Shown in pieces: positions 35,073 to 50,827 of a stretch of DNA of 64,000 nucleotides. The translations under genes and the position numbers were made by a program. The first letter of the stretch is position 1. Each line of letters begins with the position of its first letter. The stretch spans positions 140,905 to 204,904 of IMG/VR virus record IMGVR_UViG_3300042391_001376; one strand, 5' to 3'. A model generated the notes under the pieces. The model was not told the origin of the DNA and did not search any database. It saw only the letters and a program-made list of their open reading frames with translations.

Positions 35073-35158
35073 GCCCAGGTGGCGGAACCGGTAGACGCAA
35101 GGGGCTTAAACCCCCTCGATTAGAAATGATCGTACGGGTTCGATCCCCGTCTTGGGCA
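35073..35158 (+). tRNA. tRNA-Leu(TAA)
   Basis: GCCCAGG/CTTGGGC, AGGGG-CTTAAAC-CCCCT, long variable arm. Confidence 0.95.
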
Positions 35159-35178
35159 CAAAAGAACAAAGGAACTCT

Positions 35179-36618
35179 ATGCGGAATAAGAGCCACTATC
35201 TAAAACTGTTGTTAACAACAGCATTAATGTTAACAGTTCTTGTTAACTCAAAAACTAATACAGCTAATGCTGGCGATGTTGCACCAGCTGTTTCAACTGT
35301 TAAGTTTTATCGTAAACTGACCAACTATTATTTGCCCAATTTATCATCTGCAGTCCCAAGAATGGGTGCAGATATAGCTTACAATAATAACTTCAGAGGA
35401 CAAGATTCCTTTATAGTTATTCTTGATACTGGCATTGAAGCTGTCCACTCATTCTTTGGTGGCAGAGTAGCACTTGAAGCTTGCTTCGCCGTCAAATGCC
35501 CCAATGGTCAAATATCTATGGTTGGTTCTGGTGCAGCAGCCCCAATTCATTGGCACGGTACCCATGTTGCAGGCATTGCCGCTGGACTTAACTCATCTAT
35601 TAGAGGTATAGCACCAAGCGCAAAGATCATTGCAGTAAATGTTTTTGCTGCAGATGGTTCTGCTTCAGACTCTGATCTTATTCGCGCATTACAATGGGTT
35701 GATTCTATATCTGATCAATATAATATTGCGGCTGTCAACATGTCTCTTGGTACACCAGGAACATTTAAATCTTCATGCAACTCTTATATACCAGATTTAA
35801 CTTCAATTATTTCTACATTGAAGTCTAAAAATATTGCTACTGTAGTTTCAGCCGGCAACGAAGGCCAGCGTGGAATGAGTTCCCCAGCATGCATTACAGA
35901 CACTGTCAGTGTTGCCGCAACTTACACTGCTGGAGACGGCAGTGACAGAGTTACTAGCTTTAGCAACGTTAATGAATTAACTGATTTATCAGCTCCTGGA
36001 TACAACATAGTGTCTTCCAAACTTATGGGTGCATATGGTGCATCTTCAGGAACATCTATGTCAGCACCTATGGTTGCTGGCGCATTTGCAGTATACCGTT
36101 CTAAGTTTGGCGTACAATCAGTAGATAAAGTAGTATCTGACTTTCAATCTACTGGAATCAACGCAGTAGATGATTACACCAAAATTGTTACAAAAAGAAT
36201 AGATTTTAGATCCCTGTTTTCAACACCTGGATCTACACCCCCACCACCCACCACAACTATTCCCTCACCAACTACAACAACTCCATCACCTACTACCACC
36301 GTACTTGATGAAGATGATGAATCAGAAGACTATTTAAATATTCCTTACATTATAACTTTGAAAAAGTTTGCAACTAGACTATCTTATATTCGATTAGACT
36401 TTACATACAGATATACAAATATACCTGTGTCTAATTTTATTTTAAGGTGCAGATATGCAGACAATAAAATTGTTGATAAAGTTATTAGCAATAGAAACAG
36501 AACAACTAATTCTTACTTTATATCAATATCTTCATTAAATATTCGCTCATGTAGAATGGCCGCAGTATCAACAGATGGTACTGTCGGTCAATTCTCCAAA
36601 TACATATTGGTGAAATAA
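35179..36618 (+). CDS. secreted S8 (subtilisin-like) serine protease
   Basis: LDTG, HGTHVAG, SAGN, GTSMSAP; signal peptide; P/T linker; start moved downstream of the tRNA. Confidence 0.95.
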   Translation: MRNKSHYLKLLLTTALMLTVLVNSKTNTANAGDVAPAVSTVKFYRKLTNYYLPNLSSAVPRMGADIAYNNNFRGQDSFIVILDTGIEAVHSFFGGRVALEACFAVKCPNGQISMVGSGAAAPIHWHGTHVAGIAAGLNSSIRGIAPSAKIIAVNVFAADGSASDSDLIRALQWVDSISDQYNIAAVNMSLGTPGTFKSSCNSYIPDLTSIISTLKSKNIATVVSAGNEGQRGMSSPACITDTVSVAATYTAGDGSDRVTSFSNVNELTDLSAPGYNIVSSKLMGAYGASSGTSMSAPMVAGAFAVYRSKFGVQSVDKVVSDFQSTGINAVDDYTKIVTKRIDFRSLFSTPGSTPPPPTTTIPSPTTTTPSPTTTVLDEDDESEDYLNIPYIITLKKFATRLSYIRLDFTYRYTNIPVSNFILRCRYADNKIVDKVISNRNRTTNSYFISISSLNIRSCRMAAVSTDGTVGQFSKYILVK

Positions 36619-41442: not shown

Positions 41443-41898
41443 ATGGGTATGGATGTTTACGGAACAGAACCTATTGACCCAAAGGGTGAATACTTCCGCA
41501 ATAATGTTTGGTGGTGGCGTCCACTTTGGGACTACTGTTTAACTCATCATCCAGATCCTGCAGCAAAAGTGGAAAATGGACACTCCAATGATGGAGATGG
41601 ACTCAACGCTACAGATGCCACAAAACTTGGTACACTTTTAAAACAGGATATACTTTCCGGTAAAGTGGATTCATATGAAGAAAAATACAAACAGGAACTT
41701 GAATCATTACCTATGGGCAAATGTGAACATTGTTCCGGTACTGGAATACGCAATGACGAATATGTTCAGGGCACTTGTAACGCTTGCAAAGGCGAAGGCA
41801 AAGTAAAGCATTGGGCAACCAGTTATCCTTTTAGTAAAGAAAATATTCAAGAGTTTTCTGAATTCTTAATTAATTCTGGTGGCTTTAGCATTTGTTAA
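41443..41898 (+). CDS. hypothetical protein with DnaJ-type zinc finger
   Basis: CEHCSGTG and CNACKGEG. Confidence 0.75.
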   Translation: MGMDVYGTEPIDPKGEYFRNNVWWWRPLWDYCLTHHPDPAAKVENGHSNDGDGLNATDATKLGTLLKQDILSGKVDSYEEKYKQELESLPMGKCEHCSGTGIRNDEYVQGTCNACKGEGKVKHWATSYPFSKENIQEFSEFLINSGGFSIC

Positions 41899-41904
41899 AC
41901 CATC

Positions 41905-41976
41905 GCCCGTTTAGCTCAGTGGTAGAGCTCTGCACTTGTAATGCAGTGGTCCTCGGTTCAATCCCGAGAGCGGGCT
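41905..41976 (+). tRNA. tRNA-Thr(TGT)
   Basis: GCCCGTT/AGCGGGC, CTGCA-CTTGTAA-TGCAG. Confidence 0.95.
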
Positions 41977-41978
41977 CT

Positions 41979-42069
41979 AAGACAGTAGCGTGTCCTACTT
42001 AATCGTGGGCGAACCCAATGATGCAATAAGCACGTGAGACCCATATTCTCTTGGCATCACTGCTGTCTT
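41979..42069 (+). ncRNA. candidate pseudoknotted RNA, copy 1
   Basis: AAGACAGTAG/CTGCTGTCTT; CGTGT/GCACG crossing TGATGC/GCATCA. Confidence 0.6.
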
Positions 42070-42078
42070 TTATCTTCA

Positions 42079-42163
42079 TGATAGTAGCGCATTTCAATGT
42101 TGGTAATGATAGAATATAATGCGTACTACAACTTCCCGTTGTGGAACTCTATCACTACTATCA
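42079..42163 (+). ncRNA. candidate pseudoknotted RNA, copy 2
   Basis: TGATAGTAG/CTACTATCA; CGCATT/AATGCG crossing TGATAGA/TCTATCA. Confidence 0.6.
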
Positions 42164-42220
42164 CCTTTTACAGAAAGATAATTAAATGTCAACTAACCGA
42201 ATAGGTAGCCGCTAATATAC

Positions 42221-42296
42221 AGGGCGGTATACCCTCACTCTTATAAAGTGTTGAAAGGTTAGTTGGTCCACGTGGGTTCAATCCCCACCCGCCCTA
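42221..42296 (+). tRNA. non-canonical tRNA-like RNA with TAT (Ile) anticodon, no D-arm, 20-nt variable region
   Basis: AGGGCGG/CCGCCCT acceptor, CACT-CTTATAA-AGTG, GTGGG-TTCAATC-CCCAC. Confidence 0.8.
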
Positions 42297-42312
42297 CTAG
42301 TCAGGCATCAAA

Positions 42313-42645
42313 ATGTTAATAGAACGAAAGCCCTGGATGCAGGAATCTTCTTGTAATGAAGAAGATACAATTGTATTTTTCCCTAACAGATATACTGAAG
42401 CTACAGTGGCTAAGCCATTTTCTCTATGCGACACATGTTTAGTTAAAGCCGACTGTCTTTACGAGGCAATGATTACTGATTCTGTTGGCATATGGGGCGG
42501 AACAACCGAATACCAACGACTCATGCTTTTATCTAAATTATTTAATGATAACTCAAAAAATGTTAACATGAAAGCAATTATTAAGATAATAGAAAACAAC
42601 TACTACTCAATACCAATTTCATCTAGATATGAACAAAAATATTAA
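42313..42645 (+). CDS. whiB: WhiB-family transcription factor
   Basis: W...SSC...FFP...CDTCLVKADC...GIWGG. Confidence 0.9.
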   Translation: MLIERKPWMQESSCNEEDTIVFFPNRYTEATVAKPFSLCDTCLVKADCLYEAMITDSVGIWGGTTEYQRLMLLSKLFNDNSKNVNMKAIIKIIENNYYSIPISSRYEQKY

Positions 42646-46363: not shown

Positions 46364-48103
46364 ATGTCTCAGCAAGTTGAACAAACTAGCAAGATAACTC
46401 TTGATCAACTCCAATACTTTTGGATGCCATCAGGTTTGCCTTGCTTCGTCGCAGACAGGGATAGTATTTGCGACATAGTAGAAGATTTTGGTTTTAATAT
46501 TTATTATCTTCTAGCTAATAAAAAAACTGTTAAAACCATTCCGAACAACAGTGTTAAAACCACGACCACAACTGGTTATTCAAGTGGCGCTACAACATAC
46601 AACTATCCGAGTGCTCAGCCAACACAAGTTATAACATATAACTCTTCTTTGTTTAAAGTTATAAATAATTTTGTTGGTAGAGTTATAGAGCTTTCCGACG
46701 ATGAACTTCCAGAAACATTCTTTGTAGCTGAAGAAACATGCGAGTACAATATGCCCGCTATGCCGCATGTTCTTGTTGACAAAATGGATCAATTCTTTAG
46801 ACTTGTTTATTCTCAACATGGCACTGAATCAATTGTCTTGTTGACATATGATATGACTAAGACTGGTCCAGAAGGTTGGGGAGTTTTAGTTCCTGAACAG
46901 TCAAACACCGCAGCACATTGTAAGTATGATGCAGACAGCATTGCTCTTATTAAGCCAGAAGATGTTTTGATTGTCGGATCTGTTCATAGTCACCCAGAAA
47001 TGTCGGCTTATGCTTCTGGCACAGACCACGCTGACCAGGCTGATTTTGATGGTCTTCACATTACTTACGGTTGGCAGAAGTCTCAAAACAATGGTGCTAC
47101 TCAGTACCACTTAGAGCTTCAAATGGCAGGAACTGCTTACACCTTAAAGCCTGAAGATGTTTTTGAGGATTATACTTTTCAAAAAGAACCAGACCCAGAC
47201 GTAGTTGAATGGTCAGGTAAAGTAAAAAAAGCGCTCCCCCCTATAGCGGGGGGTACAACACCGCTGGCTTCGGCGCAGGCACAGTATCAACAACAAGCAC
47301 AAAAAATGACCTCATTACAAAATGGGACAACACCTATGGTGGGTGGAACACTTACTAGCAGGAATCTTAGCTGGCAACAAATGGTAGAAGGCTTAGAGCC
47401 TCAAGCTATTGTAATTGTAGAAGTAGATCTTCAACTTTCTAGAACTTCAATTTGTCCAAGTTGTGATTTTGATTTAGATACACCAGATGTAAATGCTGGA
47501 TATTGTTGCTCATGCGACGTTCCAGTTATATCATCTACACATGGTATCATGCAGATTGCTGCTCAGTTTGCTAAATATTGTGAACAAAGAAATTTAGATT
47601 ATCTTAAAACTATTCCTTATCTTTATGGTCAATCTGAAAAAGATGAAGTCTTTTTAATGAAGCTAAATCTTCAAGAAGAACTTACCGATATTCATACATA
47701 TGATTATGTTTATGAAAAAGATTCCGATTATGTTTATCTTCCTGAAGAAGACCCATATGATTCTATCTACGATATAAACGGAACAAGAACTGTCTGTTGC
47801 AATATTCCTATGGAGGATTTTGTATCTGATTGTTCGTGCAATCCAGCTATATTATTTGAAGATTTAACAAATTTTGAAGAACATATTAGGGATACAGAAA
47901 TGTACGCTGAAGGAACTTCATGTTTGGAATGCGTGCATTATTATAATGCTACCTGTCCAGCATTTCGTTCTGCTTTAACTACTTATGTTAAGCAGGGGTT
48001 TACACTAAATCTTGATCAACACAGAAACACGATAATTCCTTGCGAAAACTATCATTCTGTATATAGTTCATTTGAATCAACAGGAGCAAAAAATGGCAAC
48101 TAA
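46364..48103 (+). CDS. JAB/MPN+ metallo-isopeptidase with Cys-rich C-terminal extension
   Basis: TES...VPEQ...GSVHSHP...ASGTD..D (JAMM motif). Confidence 0.88.
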   Translation: MSQQVEQTSKITLDQLQYFWMPSGLPCFVADRDSICDIVEDFGFNIYYLLANKKTVKTIPNNSVKTTTTTGYSSGATTYNYPSAQPTQVITYNSSLFKVINNFVGRVIELSDDELPETFFVAEETCEYNMPAMPHVLVDKMDQFFRLVYSQHGTESIVLLTYDMTKTGPEGWGVLVPEQSNTAAHCKYDADSIALIKPEDVLIVGSVHSHPEMSAYASGTDHADQADFDGLHITYGWQKSQNNGATQYHLELQMAGTAYTLKPEDVFEDYTFQKEPDPDVVEWSGKVKKALPPIAGGTTPLASAQAQYQQQAQKMTSLQNGTTPMVGGTLTSRNLSWQQMVEGLEPQAIVIVEVDLQLSRTSICPSCDFDLDTPDVNAGYCCSCDVPVISSTHGIMQIAAQFAKYCEQRNLDYLKTIPYLYGQSEKDEVFLMKLNLQEELTDIHTYDYVYEKDSDYVYLPEEDPYDSIYDINGTRTVCCNIPMEDFVSDCSCNPAILFEDLTNFEEHIRDTEMYAEGTSCLECVHYYNATCPAFRSALTTYVKQGFTLNLDQHRNTIIPCENYHSVYSSFESTGAKNGN

Positions 48104-48851
48104 AAGATTTGTAGTTATTGGAGCAGGAGGCGTAGGCACTTGGCTTACCGCTGGCCTAGTAAGACTTCTTGAATGGAAGTTTCCTGGTTCTGGTTTAATT
48201 ATAGTAGATGGAGATAACTATGAAGAAAAAAATAAAGAACGTCAAGAGTTCGCTAAAATTGGCAACAAAGCTGTTGTCAAAGCGCACGAACTTACGCCTC
48301 AATTCCAGAAAACAACAATTATACCGGTTCCGAAGTGGGTTGTCAGTGACACCTTCAAAGGAGTCAGTGCAGACGAAGACTCTCCGAAGATTAAAGCGTC
48401 GGATCTCATATCTGAAGGAGATGTTGTTTTTGCAGTTGTCGATAACTTCGCTGCGCGTAAGATTATTTTTGATGCAGCTGCGAGGTTAAACAACGTAGAT
48501 GTATTTACTGGTGGCAATGACGACGCTTTGTTTGGTTCTATATATCATTACCAAAAAAGAAACGGCGTTGCAATAACCGAACATCCTTCAACATTCCATC
48601 CTGAATATGAAAATGCTCCAGATAAAAATCCTGGTGAACTATCATGCCAGGAGAGATCAGAAATAGAAGGTGGTACTCAACTACTAGCCACTAATATGGC
48701 AGTAGCTGCACTAATCCTTGGTCGCGTACAAAAAACAATTGTACTAGACCAAAGCCCCGAAGAAACTGAAATATATTTTGATTTAGGCGTAGGCAAAGCT
48801 GAGCCTTACAATCGGATGGTATCTCATGTTTCTGAATATATTACAGCATAA
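48093..48851 (+). CDS. ThiF/E1-like Ubl-activating adenylyltransferase
   Basis: VVIGAGGVG, DGD...NKERQ, VVDNFAAR, ELSC, Q...TN. Confidence 0.92.
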   Translation: MATKRFVVIGAGGVGTWLTAGLVRLLEWKFPGSGLIIVDGDNYEEKNKERQEFAKIGNKAVVKAHELTPQFQKTTIIPVPKWVVSDTFKGVSADEDSPKIKASDLISEGDVVFAVVDNFAARKIIFDAAARLNNVDVFTGGNDDALFGSIYHYQKRNGVAITEHPSTFHPEYENAPDKNPGELSCQERSEIEGGTQLLATNMAVAALILGRVQKTIVLDQSPEETEIYFDLGVGKAEPYNRMVSHVSEYITA

Positions 48852-48870
48852 ACAATAACAAGGAGCAATC

Positions 48871-49122
48871 ATGGAAAACAATATGTCAGGTGCATCAGCA
48901 TCACAAGCAACGGGAATGGCAAATCTTAGATTTGGCGTTTACAATCAACCTACTAACGTAGCTGGTAAATCAGTACAACAGACTCGTGAACAGTTCTCAA
49001 AAATTTGGGGTATCCCAACAGACGCAGTTGCCTACAAGGGCAAAGAGAAACTCGACGAGAACTATGTTATCCAACCAGGTGACAACGTAGAATTCCACCG
49101 TCGTGCTGGAGAAAAGGGCTGA
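48871..49122 (+). CDS. ubiquitin-like (beta-grasp) protein with C-terminal Gly
   Basis: 83 aa ending PGDNVEFHRRAGEKG; directly after E1. Confidence 0.85.
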   Translation: MENNMSGASASQATGMANLRFGVYNQPTNVAGKSVQQTREQFSKIWGIPTDAVAYKGKEKLDENYVIQPGDNVEFHRRAGEKG

Positions 49123-49140
49123 TACATTCAGTCTCAGGTT

Positions 49141-49190
49141 TGTGGGAAGGCTCTATACATTCCGCGTAAGAGTCTTCCCACATTTTTTTT
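49141..49190 (+). terminator. intrinsic terminator after the Ubl gene
   Basis: TGTGGGAAGGCTCT/AGAGTCTTCCCACA plus T8. Confidence 0.85.
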
Positions 49191-49222
49191 AAAAGGCTAG
49201 AGTCTATCTATTAGGGGACATA

Positions 49223-50827
49223 ATGTTATTTGATGAAATAAAACTAGGCTATCCAGCTTTATGGCTTAAGACCACTGAATTTTCCAGGGCCGCCGAAAGC
49301 TTAATCTCTTATAATTTTAGAGATTTTTATACTATTGATTTTGAATCTGCTTTTTCTCAGTATGTTGATGGCTCATGGAAGACTGTTCTTATTGAAACAC
49401 TTAATCCAGAAACAAATGAAAGAGTTGCACAGTCAACTTTTGATCCTTCTGTTTCTTTGGATTATCTTATTAATTTAAAGTCTGAAAAACCTGTTACTTT
49501 TATTCTTTCTATTATTGGTAAGCCAGATATGACATTGCCTCCATACATGTCATTTATTGCTTCTTTGAACAGTAAGTACAGAAAGAATTTCTGGGCCGAT
49601 GATGCCAACGCTGGAGCAATACAGATTATATTCTTATCTTCTACTGACGCACCAGAAGAATACGCTCACATGTTTAAGAATGTTGAATTTTCTTATCCAA
49701 ATGCTGAAGAACTATTCACTGTTGTAAACCATATTGACAATGCTTCTGCAGGGCGATTTATAAAACAAGATTCAGTTAAAGATATTGTTCGTTCTGGTTT
49801 AGGTCTTGCTGAAGATCAGTTTGTAGATCTTTGTTTGCGTTCCATTTTGCATCACAACGAAGTTAACCCAAAGTACATATATGATCAAAAGATGGCTAAG
49901 ATTAAACAAGCCGGCATTCTTGAAATCATTAAGCCAACTATATCTTTTGCTAACATTGGTGGCTTAGATAATATTAAAGATATTATTCAAAGAACTAAAC
50001 TTCTTTGGGATAACAGAGAGCAAGCAAAATCTTTTGGCGTTGTACCAATCAGAAGAGTTCTTATGGTGGGCGTTCCAGGCACTGGCAAGTCAGCTATCTG
50101 CCAAGCAACTGCTCATGAACTAGGTCTTGACTTAGCTCGTACTGGAATTAGCCAAGTTATGAATTCTTTTGTTGGCCAGTCAGAGCAGAACATGCGAGCA
50201 GTTTTTCAACAGATTAAGATGATGACTCCACTTTGTGTTTGGATCGACGAGTTTGGTCGAGATCTTTCAGGTGGTGCTTCTTCTGCTTCTGTAGATGCGG
50301 GCACTACTGATCGCGTACACGGCGAATTCTTAACTGGTCTTCAAGAACTTCCAGAAGATACATTTCTTATGTGTGCAGCTAATCAAATAGAGAACCTTCG
50401 TCCCGAGATGCTTCGCGCAGATCGTTTCGATAAAATTGTTTTTGTTGGTCTTCCATCTCTTGAGGAAAGAAAAGATATCTTTAAGATATGCTTGAAGACA
50501 ATTGAAACAGATCACCAATTTGATCTAGATGCCCTAGCTGAAAAAGCAGAATACTTTACTGGCGCAGAAATAACTGCATTGATCAAAGAAGTTAAGTTCT
50601 TTGTAGTTTCATCTGAACTTAGATCTATAAATACTAATGATATTATATCTTATATTCCAAACGTTCGTAATATACTTTGGAACAAGAACAGAGACATGAT
50701 CAAGGGTATGTACCAATACGCCCTTGAACAGTGGGACTGGGCTTCGACACAACAACAAAAAGATGCTAAACTAATATTAGCAGGAAGAAAGTCTAATTCT
50801 GAATCAGAGTTAGCTTGGAAGATTTAA
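49223..50827 (+). CDS. classical-clade AAA ATPase (Ycf46-like)
   Basis: IGGLDNIK, GVPGTGKS, FVGQSE pore loop, WIDE, RADRFD. Confidence 0.92.
   Translation: MLFDEIKLGYPALWLKTTEFSRAAESLISYNFRDFYTIDFESAFSQYVDGSWKTVLIETLNPETNERVAQSTFDPSVSLDYLINLKSEKPVTFILSIIGKPDMTLPPYMSFIASLNSKYRKNFWADDANAGAIQIIFLSSTDAPEEYAHMFKNVEFSYPNAEELFTVVNHIDNASAGRFIKQDSVKDIVRSGLGLAEDQFVDLCLRSILHHNEVNPKYIYDQKMAKIKQAGILEIIKPTISFANIGGLDNIKDIIQRTKLLWDNREQAKSFGVVPIRRVLMVGVPGTGKSAICQATAHELGLDLARTGISQVMNSFVGQSEQNMRAVFQQIKMMTPLCVWIDEFGRDLSGGASSASVDAGTTDRVHGEFLTGLQELPEDTFLMCAANQIENLRPEMLRADRFDKIVFVGLPSLEERKDIFKICLKTIETDHQFDLDALAEKAEYFTGAEITALIKEVKFFVVSSELRSINTNDIISYIPNVRNILWNKNRDMIKGMYQYALEQWDWASTQQQKDAKLILAGRKSNSESELAWKI

What the first reader, a model, noticed from the sequence alone, without database searches (positions are those of the whole stretch)
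41979..42163. Tandem pair of covarying pseudoknot RNAs between tRNA-Thr and the odd tRNA
Two ~90-nt units share the anchors AGTAGCG, AATGAT, AATA, CGT and ATCACT and the same topology: a closing helix enclosing two crossing helices. Helix sequences differ in a compensatory way (CGTGT/GCACG vs CGCATT/AATGCG; TGATGC/GCATCA vs TGATAGA/TCTATCA). Unit 1 starts 2 nt after the tRNA discriminator. I do not recognise the family. It could be a processing ribozyme, a nuclease-resistant RNA or a decoy/antitoxin RNA.
Basis: seen in the sequence. Interest (0 to 1): 0.75.

Follow-up and report, generated by a model that had tools for sequence, protein, structure and literature searches.

The report
Paired pseudoknot RNAs after phage tRNA-Thr
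Two related ~90-base folded RNAs of a previously undescribed family sit directly behind a tRNA-Thr gene in a lake-water phage and recur in about 20 related phage contigs with base-pair-preserving changes, so the structure is real, but what it does is still inferred.

Summary
Window 41979-42069 (unit 1) and 42079-42163 (unit 2) each form a 9-10 bp closing helix P1. P1 runs on its 5' strand into helix a and on its 3' strand into helix b. Helices a and b cross, forming a pseudoknot.

I collected 15 distinct unit-1 and 13 distinct unit-2 sequences from lake metagenome and viral contigs. 97-99.7% of the proposed pairs are kept. Seven P1/b pairs change on both sides, and helix a has two more between the units. 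The hairpin between a' and b' is replaced by at least five unrelated stems. About 230 chance matches to the same sequence anchors never form the three helices.

Rfam 15 gives no hit. No copy was found in GenBank phages by blastn, or in 185,579 prokaryotic species genomes by an anchor-pattern scan.

The units belong to a conserved cassette: tRNA-Thr(UGU), CU, unit 1, about 8 nt, unit 2, a small ORF (vestigial here), then an atypical tRNA-Ile-like gene.

Metatranscriptome contigs cover unit 2 through the odd tRNA but not unit 1.

My best reading (about 0.35) is that these are excised, nuclease-resistant processing and stability modules of a phage tRNA operon, laid out like T4 species 1/2 RNAs. 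A new self-cleaving ribozyme, a ligand-binding aptamer or a decoy RNA are not excluded.

The parts
41905..41977 (+). tRNA-Thr(UGU); discriminator U41976, followed by CUA rather than CCA
   Evidence: ARAGORN; Rfam tRNA 68.4 bits. It lies immediately upstream of unit 1 in every contig that has a unit 1.
41979..42069 (+). Unit 1, complete fold bounded by closing helix P1 (41979-41988 with 42060-42069)
   Evidence: Among 15 distinct homologues 99.5% of cells are paired, and three P1 pairs change on both sides.
41989..42034 (+). Unit 1 helix a (41989-41993 with 42030-42034). It encloses variable hairpin v (41996-41998 with 42005-42007), the GG/CC mini-hairpin (42008-42009 with 42014-42015), the 5' strand of helix b and the AAUAA linker (42025-42029).
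   Evidence: Hairpin v takes different stem and loop forms in L180, L181 and L004.
42019..42059 (+). Unit 1 helix b (42019-42024 with 42054-42059). It crosses helix a and encloses hairpin h (42036-42039 with 42047-42050, loop CCCAUAU).
   Evidence: the sixth pair occurs as U.G, C-G and U-A..
42070..42078 (+). A/U-rich single-stranded linker between the units; candidate endonuclease site
   Evidence: Its sequence varies among relatives. Three metatranscriptome contigs start at about 42066, 42072 and 42087.
42079..42165 (+). Unit 2: P1 42079-42087 with 42155-42163; helix a 42088-42093 with 42118-42123; helix b 42107-42113 with 42148-42154; hairpin h 42126-42132 with 42138-42144; invariant CC tail 42164-42165
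   Evidence: Among 13 distinct homologues 99.7% of cells are paired. Helix a changes from U-A to C-G in the L190 type. Hairpin h is replaced by at least five unrelated stems.
42186..42215 (+). Nine-codon remnant (MSTNRIGSR*) of the 44-47 aa basic ORF that relatives carry between unit 2 and the odd tRNA
42221..42299 (+). Atypical tRNA-Ile-like gene (anticodon loop CUUAUAA, no normal D arm) that closes the cassette

Best explanation
**What it is (high confidence, above 0.9).** Units 1 and 2 are diverged paralogues of one new phage non-coding RNA fold, read from the + strand. A 9-10 bp clamp helix P1 closes each unit. The inner end of P1 continues without a spacer into helix a on the 5' strand and into helix b on the 3' strand. 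Helices a and b cross as an H-type pseudoknot. Their far ends are tied by a conserved 4-5 nt A/U linker. Conserved AA and U bases sit at the three-helix junction. Variable hairpins occupy the loops.

The units belong to a mobile cassette of lake-water, probably actinobacterial, phages: tRNA-Thr(UGU), CU, unit 1, about 8 nt, unit 2, CC, a small basic ORF (vestigial here), then a tRNA-Ile-like gene.

**How it most likely works (inferred, about 0.35).** The cassette is transcribed as part of a long + strand operon.
1. An RNase Z-type cut after the CCA-less tRNA-Thr leaves unit 1 with only a 2-nt 5' overhang in front of P1.
2. A second cut falls in the A/U-rich linker between the units.
3. RNase P cuts at the odd tRNA.

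This releases or exposes compact, clamp-closed pseudoknot domains. They resist 5'-end-dependent and 3'-exonucleolytic decay. They therefore set the processing sites and protect the adjoining RNA: the tRNA-Thr 3' end, and the unit 2, leader and odd pre-tRNA stretch with the small-ORF mRNA. The units themselves accumulate as small stable RNAs, as T4 species 1 and 2 RNAs do behind tRNA-Arg.
For: **Structure**
- Anchors and helices are present at the stated coordinates.
- 15 + 13 distinct homologues exist.
- Pairs are kept in 99.5% (unit 1), 99.7% (unit 2) and 96.9% (joint P1+b) of cells, against 24-72% when partners are slid. Covariation score is 0.377 against 0.177 in shuffles, with 0 of 500 shuffles reaching it.
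- Both-side changes between the paralogues occur in helices a and b.
- Hairpin h is swapped for unrelated stems.
- The model built from unit 2 alone finds all 15 unit-1 copies full length, at E from 0.0075 to 0.35 in 160 kb.

**Strand**
- Many G.U cells would be A.C mismatches on the other strand.
- All neighbouring genes lie on the + strand.
- No promoter or terminator match lies between tRNA-Thr and the WhiB gene on the + strand.

**Cassette**
- tRNA-Thr ends exactly 2 nt before P1 in all 15 unit-1 variants. These carry three different tRNA-Thr sequences and at least four different upstream contexts.
- The outer four P1 pairs never vary.
- The other six tRNAs in the window have no comparably structured trailer.

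**RNA evidence**
- Metatranscriptome contigs cover 42066-42294, 42087-42261 and 42190-42299. None covers unit 1 or the upstream CDS.

**Precedent**
- T4 has tRNA-Arg, 1 nt, rnaD, 6 nt, rnaC, annotated as small stable RNAs.
- That 5'-terminal stem-loops within a few nt of the 5' end protect against RNase E and RNase J is established knowledge. It was not tested here.
Against: - A simple hairpin would be enough to block nucleases. The near-invariant junction and loop bases (UGUUGGKAA, AAUAU/AAUAA) point to a more specific job such as catalysis or binding of a ligand or protein.
- In one lineage (L009/L011/L209) unit 2 stands alone behind a CDS, with no tRNA-Thr.
- Unit 2 has decayed in L184 and L204 while unit 1 is intact, so neither unit is indispensable.
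- The RNA evidence is from assembled contigs at 2-5x depth. It does not map true RNA ends.
- The host and its RNases are unknown.
- All sequences come from one fairly narrow clade, so the number of independent compensatory events is modest.
Confidence: 0.35

Rival explanations
1. Trans-acting binding RNA. After excision, each unit is a stable decoy or sponge that binds a host or phage protein, for example a nuclease or a defence or translation factor, through its conserved junction and loops.
For: - Loop and junction bases are almost invariant, while the peripheral hairpins h and v are free to change.
- Either unit can persist without the other, and without the small ORF.
- The family was found only in phage or metagenome contigs. 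None of the 58 anchor-pattern hits in prokaryotic genomes is a true copy.
- Two diverged paralogues could have two specificities.
Against: - No partner was identified. Neither phage genome encodes a Ro/TROVE, CCA-adding or RtcB protein. No ToxN match was found either, but that search's control rang nowhere.
- The strict 2-nt spacing to tRNA-Thr and the invariant outer P1 pairs are not explained by this reading.
Confidence: 0.25
2. A new class of self-cleaving ribozyme. It would cut the polycistronic transcript at or near its own 5' end, freeing the tRNA-Thr 3' end and separating the units. This would be functionally like the HDV-like theta ribozymes that accompany phage tRNAs.
For: - It directly abuts a phage tRNA 3' end at fixed distance.
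- It has a compact pseudoknotted core of about 90 nt with conserved unpaired junction bases, and the P1 end and flanks are invariant.
- The units occur in tandem.
- RNA contigs begin near the unit 1 / unit 2 boundary.
- There is precedent for a proposed tRNA 3'-trailer processing role for theta ribozymes (PMC10879173).
Against: - No match to any ribozyme family in Rfam, even at E<=10.
- The strand order is incompatible with the HDV fold.
- Unit 2 occurs without a tRNA in one lineage.
- The distribution is very narrow, and there is no biochemical evidence.
Confidence: 0.15
3. Tandem ligand-binding aptamers, acting as a riboswitch or a small-molecule sponge. They would control the downstream small ORF or odd-tRNA maturation, or sequester a signalling nucleotide.
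For: - P1-closed junction plus pseudoknot with a conserved core and variable periphery is typical aptamer architecture.
- In many relatives a Shine-Dalgarno sequence and a conserved 44-47 aa ORF start about 20 nt after unit 2.
- Tandem aptamers are known for other riboswitch classes (general knowledge).
Against: - There is no expression platform: no terminator, and no pairing with the Shine-Dalgarno sequence.
- The ORF is reduced to 9 codons in the window and in six other unit-2 variants whose units are intact.
- Unit 1 is followed by unit 2, not by a gene.
- There is no Rfam riboswitch hit.
Confidence: 0.08
4. tRNA-like mimic. Unit 2 presents an acceptor-like end: helix starting at G, purine, then CC. 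It would be handled by RNase P and the CCA-adding enzyme as a tRNA surrogate.
For: - An invariant R-CC directly follows P1 in all 13 unit-2 variants, while the following bases vary. L157 encodes ACCA.
- U precedes the first G-C pair.
- T4 rnaD likewise ends in ACC(A), and T4 rnaC has a T arm.
Against: - Unit 1 has no CC tail.
- The tRNA model and ARAGORN do not see the units.
- The phage's own tRNAs are followed by CUA, not CCA.
- The CC may instead pair with the conserved loop GG. Unit 1 has a local GG/CC hairpin at the equivalent place.
Confidence: 0.05
5. A DNA-level repeat (origin, recombination site) or a chance similarity with no RNA function.
For: The minus strands also fold below their shuffles (z = -2.9 and -2.0).
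Against: - Strand-specific G.U pairs and compensatory changes are present.
- Chance anchor matches never form the helices.
- The hairpin shape is kept while its sequence is replaced.
Confidence: 0.02

Closest known systems
Bacteriophage T4 small stable RNAs rnaD (species 2) and rnaC (species 1)
   Same: Both are a tandem pair of non-tRNA RNAs encoded 1-6 nt behind a tRNA in a phage tRNA cluster, on the same strand and of unknown function. The layout tRNA, 1-2 nt, RNA, 6-8 nt, RNA is nearly identical.
   Different: There is no detectable homology: model R1 does not hit them. The T4 RNAs are longer (119 and 139 nt). rnaC ends in a canonical T arm, and neither shows the P1/a/b pseudoknot in the sequences or nested MFE folds I read. 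The host and phage lineage are different.
HDV-like theta ribozymes next to phage tRNAs (PMC10879173)
   Same: Both are small pseudoknotted RNAs associated with phage tRNA genes, and a role in tRNA 3'-trailer processing has been proposed for theta ribozymes.
   Different: The strand order differs. Only 4-5 nt lie between b 5' and a 3', where HDV needs the P3 hairpin, and an extra closing helix P1 encloses everything. No HDV-family hit appears at E<=10. Self-cleavage is untested.
Type III toxin-antitoxin RNA antitoxins (ToxI, CptI, TenpI) and phage pseudo-ToxI decoys
   Same: Both are tandem RNA units that fold as pseudoknots, and phages can carry such decoys (general knowledge).
   Different: Type III antitoxins are near-identical repeats of about 34-45 nt placed in front of a toxin gene. 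Here there are two units of about 90 nt with mean column identity 62% in the joint alignment A8 and no toxin gene downstream. A ToxN family search found nothing in two phage genomes, but its control was silent.
Exoribonuclease-resistant RNAs (xrRNA) and 5'-terminal stabiliser stem-loops
   Same: Both are compact, clamp-closed pseudoknotted folds. xrRNAs often occur in tandem. Here the fold would start 2 nt from the 5' end created by tRNA 3' processing.
   Different: There is no Rfam xrRNA hit. The xrRNA ring topology, in which the 5' end pairs into a three-way junction, is not present. Nuclease resistance is untested.

Membership tests
HDV-like / theta ribozyme | Nested double pseudoknot with strand order P1-P2-P3-P3'-P1'-P4-P4'-P2' | tested here: not met
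   The order here is P1c-a-(v)-b-a'-h-b'-P1c'. Only 4-5 nt lie between b 5' and a 3', so there is no P3 hairpin.
HDV-like / theta ribozyme | Match to HDV-family covariance models | tested here: not met
   No hit at E<=10 on the window, or at E<=5 on three relatives.
HDV-like / theta ribozyme | Sits next to a phage tRNA gene | tested here: met
   It lies 2 nt after the tRNA-Thr discriminator in all 15 unit-1 variants.
HDV-like / theta ribozyme | Self-cleavage at its 5' end | not testable with these tools
   This needs an in vitro transcription and cleavage assay.
Type III antitoxin RNA (ToxI-like) | Array of near-identical short (about 34-45 nt) direct repeats | tested here: not met
   There are two units of about 90 nt. 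Mean column identity is 62% in the joint alignment of both unit types, and the helices have different sequences.
Type III antitoxin RNA (ToxI-like) | Toxin endoribonuclease gene immediately downstream | tested here: not met
   Downstream lie the odd tRNA and a WhiB-like gene. A ToxN search of G000 and G001 was empty, but its control rang nowhere, so that part is inconclusive.
T4 rnaC/rnaD-type small stable RNAs | Tandem non-tRNA genes directly behind a tRNA in a phage tRNA cluster | tested here: met
   One search compared.
T4 rnaC/rnaD-type small stable RNAs | Sequence or structure homology to rnaC/rnaD | tested here: not met
   R1, run without filters, gives no hit on rnaC or rnaD. Their folds differ.
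T4 rnaC/rnaD-type small stable RNAs | Accumulates as a discrete processed stable RNA | tested here: inconclusive
   Metatranscriptome contigs cover unit 2 to the odd tRNA at 2-5x. Unit 1 is not seen, and true RNA ends are not mapped.
tRNA / tRNA-like structure | Cloverleaf recognised by tRNA models | tested here: not met
   ARAGORN and Rfam RF00005 report only tRNA-Thr. The odd tRNA gets only a weak tmRNA tRNA-like-domain hit. Nothing is reported on the units.
Any riboswitch, ribozyme, xrRNA or sRNA family in Rfam 15 | Covariance-model match | tested here: not met
   no family overlaps the units apart from one chance-level hit on the minus strand (eeev_FSE, 13 bits against a gathering score of 80, E=8.4).

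The most novel reading that the evidence does not exclude
The fold is a new catalytic or ligand-binding RNA class. One possibility is a self-cleaving ribozyme that matures phage tRNA transcripts without host 3'-processing nucleases. The other is a tandem aptamer that a phage uses to sense or soak up a small molecule, for example a defence signalling nucleotide.
Probability: 0.2. Interest if true: 0.85.

Novelty: new variant of a known kind. Interest (0 to 1): 0.6.

Why it matters
Phage tRNA clusters have been known since T4 to carry extra small stable RNAs whose function is still unknown. This is a second, unrelated and structurally well-defined example, from uncultured freshwater phages.

It offers a compact pseudoknot fold and natural "experiments": two paralogues, single-unit lineages, decayed copies, and cassettes with and without the small ORF. 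These make the question testable.

If the fold is catalytic or ligand-binding, it would add a new ribozyme or aptamer class linked to tRNA maturation. If it is a stability or processing module, it shows how phages build host-independent punctuation into tRNA operons.

Tried and rejected
- **Rfam.** Searched at gathering and permissive thresholds on the window and on three relatives. Nothing was found on the units.
- **GenBank phages.** blastn found only the tRNA-Thr and odd-tRNA parts.
- **A looser anchor pattern on viral contigs.** This served as a negative control but yielded no new members.
- **Prokaryotic genomes.** The strict pattern gave 58 hits, all chance.
- **HDV-like fold.** Rejected on strand order.
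- **tRNA-like parse of unit 2.** A D-arm-like CAUU/AAUG pairing was considered. It is rejected because the L190-type change keeps helix a and breaks that alternative.
- **Alternative unit 1 helix from the MFE fold (AUCGU/AUGAU).** Not conserved in relatives.
- **Loop-loop pairing GUGGG with CCCAU in unit 1.** Not supported, because a C-to-A change in L180, L190 and L204 is uncompensated.
- **7-nt complementarity between unit 1 hairpin h and the unit 2 linker.** Expected by chance (my estimate is about 0.4), and each unit occurs without the other.
- **T4 rnaC/rnaD homology.** No model hit. The AGUAGCG motif that occurs twice in rnaC is probably coincidence.
- **Partner-gene searches.** No TROVE/Ro, CCA-adding enzyme or RtcB; ToxN was also empty, but its control was silent.
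- **Small downstream ORF.** No Pfam or PHROG family.
- **The catalogue of about 10,000 viral candidate structured RNAs (PMC10690425).** It could not be checked, because its supplementary files are not held. The family could be an unnamed entry there.
- **Joint MAFFT alignment.** It misaligns the a 3' strand by 2 nt, so helix a between the units was counted by script instead.

Full report
**Where it is.** The window is the last 64 kb of a 204,904-bp IMG/VR virus record, estimated 97% complete. The DNA recurs in many lake-water metagenomes. A WhiB-like gene lies directly downstream, which points to an actinobacterial host. All genes around the finding are on the + strand. The local order is:
- a CDS with a DnaJ-type zinc-finger motif, 41443-41898;
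- tRNA-Thr(UGU), 41905-41977;
- unit 1;
- unit 2;
- an atypical tRNA-like gene, 42221-42299;
- the WhiB-like gene, 42313-42645.

No ORF of 40 aa or more crosses the units on either strand.

**Checking the observation.** The combined anchor pattern occurs twice in the window, against 0.01 expected.

Each unit has a closing helix P1. Two helices start with zero spacer at its inner end. Helix a continues the 5' strand and helix b continues the 3' strand. The 5' strand of b lies inside the loop of a, so a and b form an H-type pseudoknot under a clamp. A hairpin h lies between a' and b'. Unit 1 has two extra small hairpins between a and b.

Nested sub-structures with a or with b are within 1-2 kcal/mol of each other. 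Each of a and b is worth -4.6 to -6.5 kcal/mol as an isolated duplex. MFE z-scores are -3.07 and -2.90.

**Homologues.** An anchor-pattern scan found the element in three viral contigs and in 21 of 77 metagenome loci. The remaining 56 metagenome matches, about 115 viral matches to a looser pattern and all 58 matches in 185,579 prokaryotic species genomes are chance hits. True copies score 9/9, 5/5 and 6/6 pairs for P1, a and b. No chance match has all three helices intact, and P1 in them is mostly 3-6 of 9. These chance matches act as an empirical control showing that the helices are not a by-product of the anchors.

After removing duplicates there are 15 distinct unit-1 and 13 distinct unit-2 sequences.

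**Covariation.**

| Alignment | Cells paired | Both-side changes |
|---|---|---|
| Unit 1 alone | 99.5% | three P1 pairs |
| Unit 2 alone | 99.7% | one helix a pair (U-A to C-G) |
| Both units, P1 and b only | 96.9% (24-72% when partners are slid) | seven pairs |

- Within unit 1, the sixth pair of helix b occurs as U.G, C-G and U-A.
- In the joint alignment the covariation score is 0.377, against 0.177 in shuffles, and 0 of 500 shuffles reach it.
- Helix a could not be counted in the joint alignment because MAFFT shifts its 3' strand by 2 nt. A register-anchored script shows that its pairs 3 and 4 differ on both sides between the units, as do pairs 5 and 6 of helix b.
- Hairpin h keeps its position but has at least five unrelated stem sequences among unit-2 variants.
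- The first extra hairpin of unit 1 likewise changes stem and loop.
- Many pairs are G.U, which would be A.C on the other strand. The RNA is therefore read from the + strand.
- A covariance model built from three unit-2 sequences only recovers every unit 1 at full length, ranked directly after the unit-2 hits, at E from 0.0075 to 0.35 in 160 kb. This supports common descent of the two units.

One caveat applies. All sequences come from a fairly narrow phage clade, and the paralogue differences each count as one event. The number of independent compensatory events is therefore modest, roughly a dozen across P1, a and b, plus the swapped hairpins.

**Context in relatives.** The units are part of a cassette. 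tRNA-Thr(UGU) ends exactly two bases before P1 in all 15 unit-1 variants. These variants carry three different tRNA-Thr sequences and at least four different upstream neighbourhoods. Unit 2 follows after about 8 variable A/U-rich bases. An invariant CC follows P1 of unit 2.

Next comes a Shine-Dalgarno sequence and a conserved 44-47 aa basic ORF. It is 22 aa in L155 and reduced to nine codons here, at 42186-42215. The ORF matches no known family.

The cassette ends with the atypical tRNA. That odd tRNA also occurs in many other phages that have no units.

There are informative exceptions:
- L009, L011 and L209 have unit 2 alone behind a CDS.
- L184 and L204 have an intact unit 1 and a decayed unit 2.
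- L003 and L005 lack tRNA-Thr and the units, and have a normal tRNA-Ile(UAU) at the odd tRNA's place.

Each unit therefore works on its own, and neither depends on the small ORF.

None of the other six tRNAs in the window has a comparably structured trailer. No promoter- or terminator-like site lies between tRNA-Thr and the WhiB gene on the + strand.

**Expression.** In four metatranscriptome runs, assembled contigs cover 42066-42294 (a 222-nt contig), 42076-42131, 42087-42261 and 42190-42299. No contig covers unit 1 (depth 0 across 42016-42059) or the upstream CDS. tRNA-Thr matches in those runs have foreign flanks, so they come from other organisms.

DNA contamination would be expected to show unit 1 as well. 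The signal therefore looks RNA-derived. It is consistent with a processed species running from unit 2 to the odd tRNA, with a 5' end near the inter-unit linker. Depth is only 2-5x, and contigs do not give true RNA ends, so this evidence is suggestive only.

**What it is not.**
- Rfam 15 has no match, even at E<=10.
- It is not HDV-like. Only 4-5 nt separate b 5' from a 3', where the HDV fold needs P3, and an extra clamp encloses everything.
- It is not a type III antitoxin array. The units are long and divergent, and no toxin gene follows.
- tRNA models do not see it.
- T4's rnaD and rnaC share the layout (tRNA-Arg, 1 nt, rnaD, 6 nt, rnaC) but not the sequence or fold.
- The phage genomes encode no Ro/TROVE, CCA-adding or RtcB protein. 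The ToxN search was also empty, but its control was silent.

**Mechanism.** These points are shown:
- a conserved, strand-specific, clamp-closed pseudoknot fold present as two paralogues;
- fixed fusion to the 3' end of a CCA-less tRNA;
- membership of a tRNA cassette;
- presence in RNA libraries.

These points are inferred. An RNase Z-type cut after the discriminator would leave unit 1 with a 2-nt 5' overhang. That is the geometry known to protect RNAs from 5'-end-dependent RNase E and RNase J attack. The A/U-rich linker is a plausible endonuclease site. RNase P would cut at the odd tRNA.

Under this model the units punctuate and stabilise the operon's products and accumulate as small stable RNAs. 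I give this reading about 0.35.

The strongly conserved junction and loop bases argue for something more specific. I therefore keep three rivals open: a trans-acting binding or decoy RNA (0.25), a new self-cleaving ribozyme (0.15) and an aptamer (0.08).

One further detail may matter. The invariant CC tail of unit 2 and the conserved loop GG may pair with each other. Unit 1 has a local GG/CC hairpin at the equivalent place and no CC tail. Alternatively, R-CC mimics a tRNA acceptor end for RNase P. Neither alternative could be tested here.

**Novelty and score.** This is a new RNA family with no database match. It belongs to a known but unexplained category, the extra structured RNAs of phage tRNA clusters. 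I could not check whether it is an unnamed entry in the catalogue of about 10,000 viral candidate structured RNAs. Interest is 0.6. The structure is solid and the system is testable. The score would rise sharply if catalysis or ligand binding were shown.

Noticed in passing
window 42221-42299: The 'odd tRNA' is a real, widespread family, with 18 distinct versions in the loci fetched. Its acceptor and T stems covary around an invariant core. The anticodon loop is CU[U/G]AUAA, giving UAU or GAU (both Ile). It has no normal D arm. A D-loop-like UAGUUGGU segment lies between the anticodon arm and the T arm. ARAGORN misses it here. It is also present in Streptomyces phages such as EGole, just after a nucleotidyltransferase gene, where it is annotated tRNA-Leu.
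   Followed up: partly
window 42186-42215; L209:2865-3008 and others: A nine-codon ORF (MSTNRIGSR*) is the remnant of a conserved 44-47 aa basic protein (M.KP.VFKDYGQESFTLAQIKAYRKQD...NRIRTK*). Relatives encode it between unit 2 and the odd tRNA. It has no Pfam or PHROG family.
   Followed up: partly
window 42198-42220; L020 upstream of 4302: A leader motif CGAAUA[C/G]G.. just 5' of the odd tRNA is conserved even in phages with neither the small ORF nor the units. In several versions the leader can pair with the 5' acceptor strand (for example CCCUGU with ACAGGG).
   Followed up: no
window 41977-41979 and 42297-42299; L005 2983-2985: tRNA-Thr, the odd tRNA and a relative's tRNA-Ile are each followed by CUA instead of CCA.
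   Followed up: no
window 46364-50827: Adjacent genes carry a weak JAB-domain match (below Pfam's cut-off), a ThiF/E1-like domain and an AAA+ ATPase domain. This may be a ubiquitin-like conjugation or deconjugation module in a phage.
   Followed up: no
L184:890-955; L204 downstream of 4631 (- strand): These are decayed copies of unit 2 next to an intact unit 1, showing that unit 2 has been lost in some lineages.
   Followed up: partly
L285:1409-1547 (- strand; T4 rnaC): T4 species 1 RNA contains the heptamer AGUAGCG twice, the same heptamer that opens both units here. No model-level similarity was found, so this is probably coincidence.
   Followed up: partly
L008:4783-5099: A viral contig fetched through a weak partial WhiB match (residues 39-69) encodes a tmRNA with tag AESRSAFALAA, next to tRNA-Asn.
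   Followed up: no
window 35073-35159 and 35152-36618: The listed TTG start of the subtilase-family ORF overlaps the 3' end of tRNA-Leu. The real start is probably further downstream.
   Followed up: no
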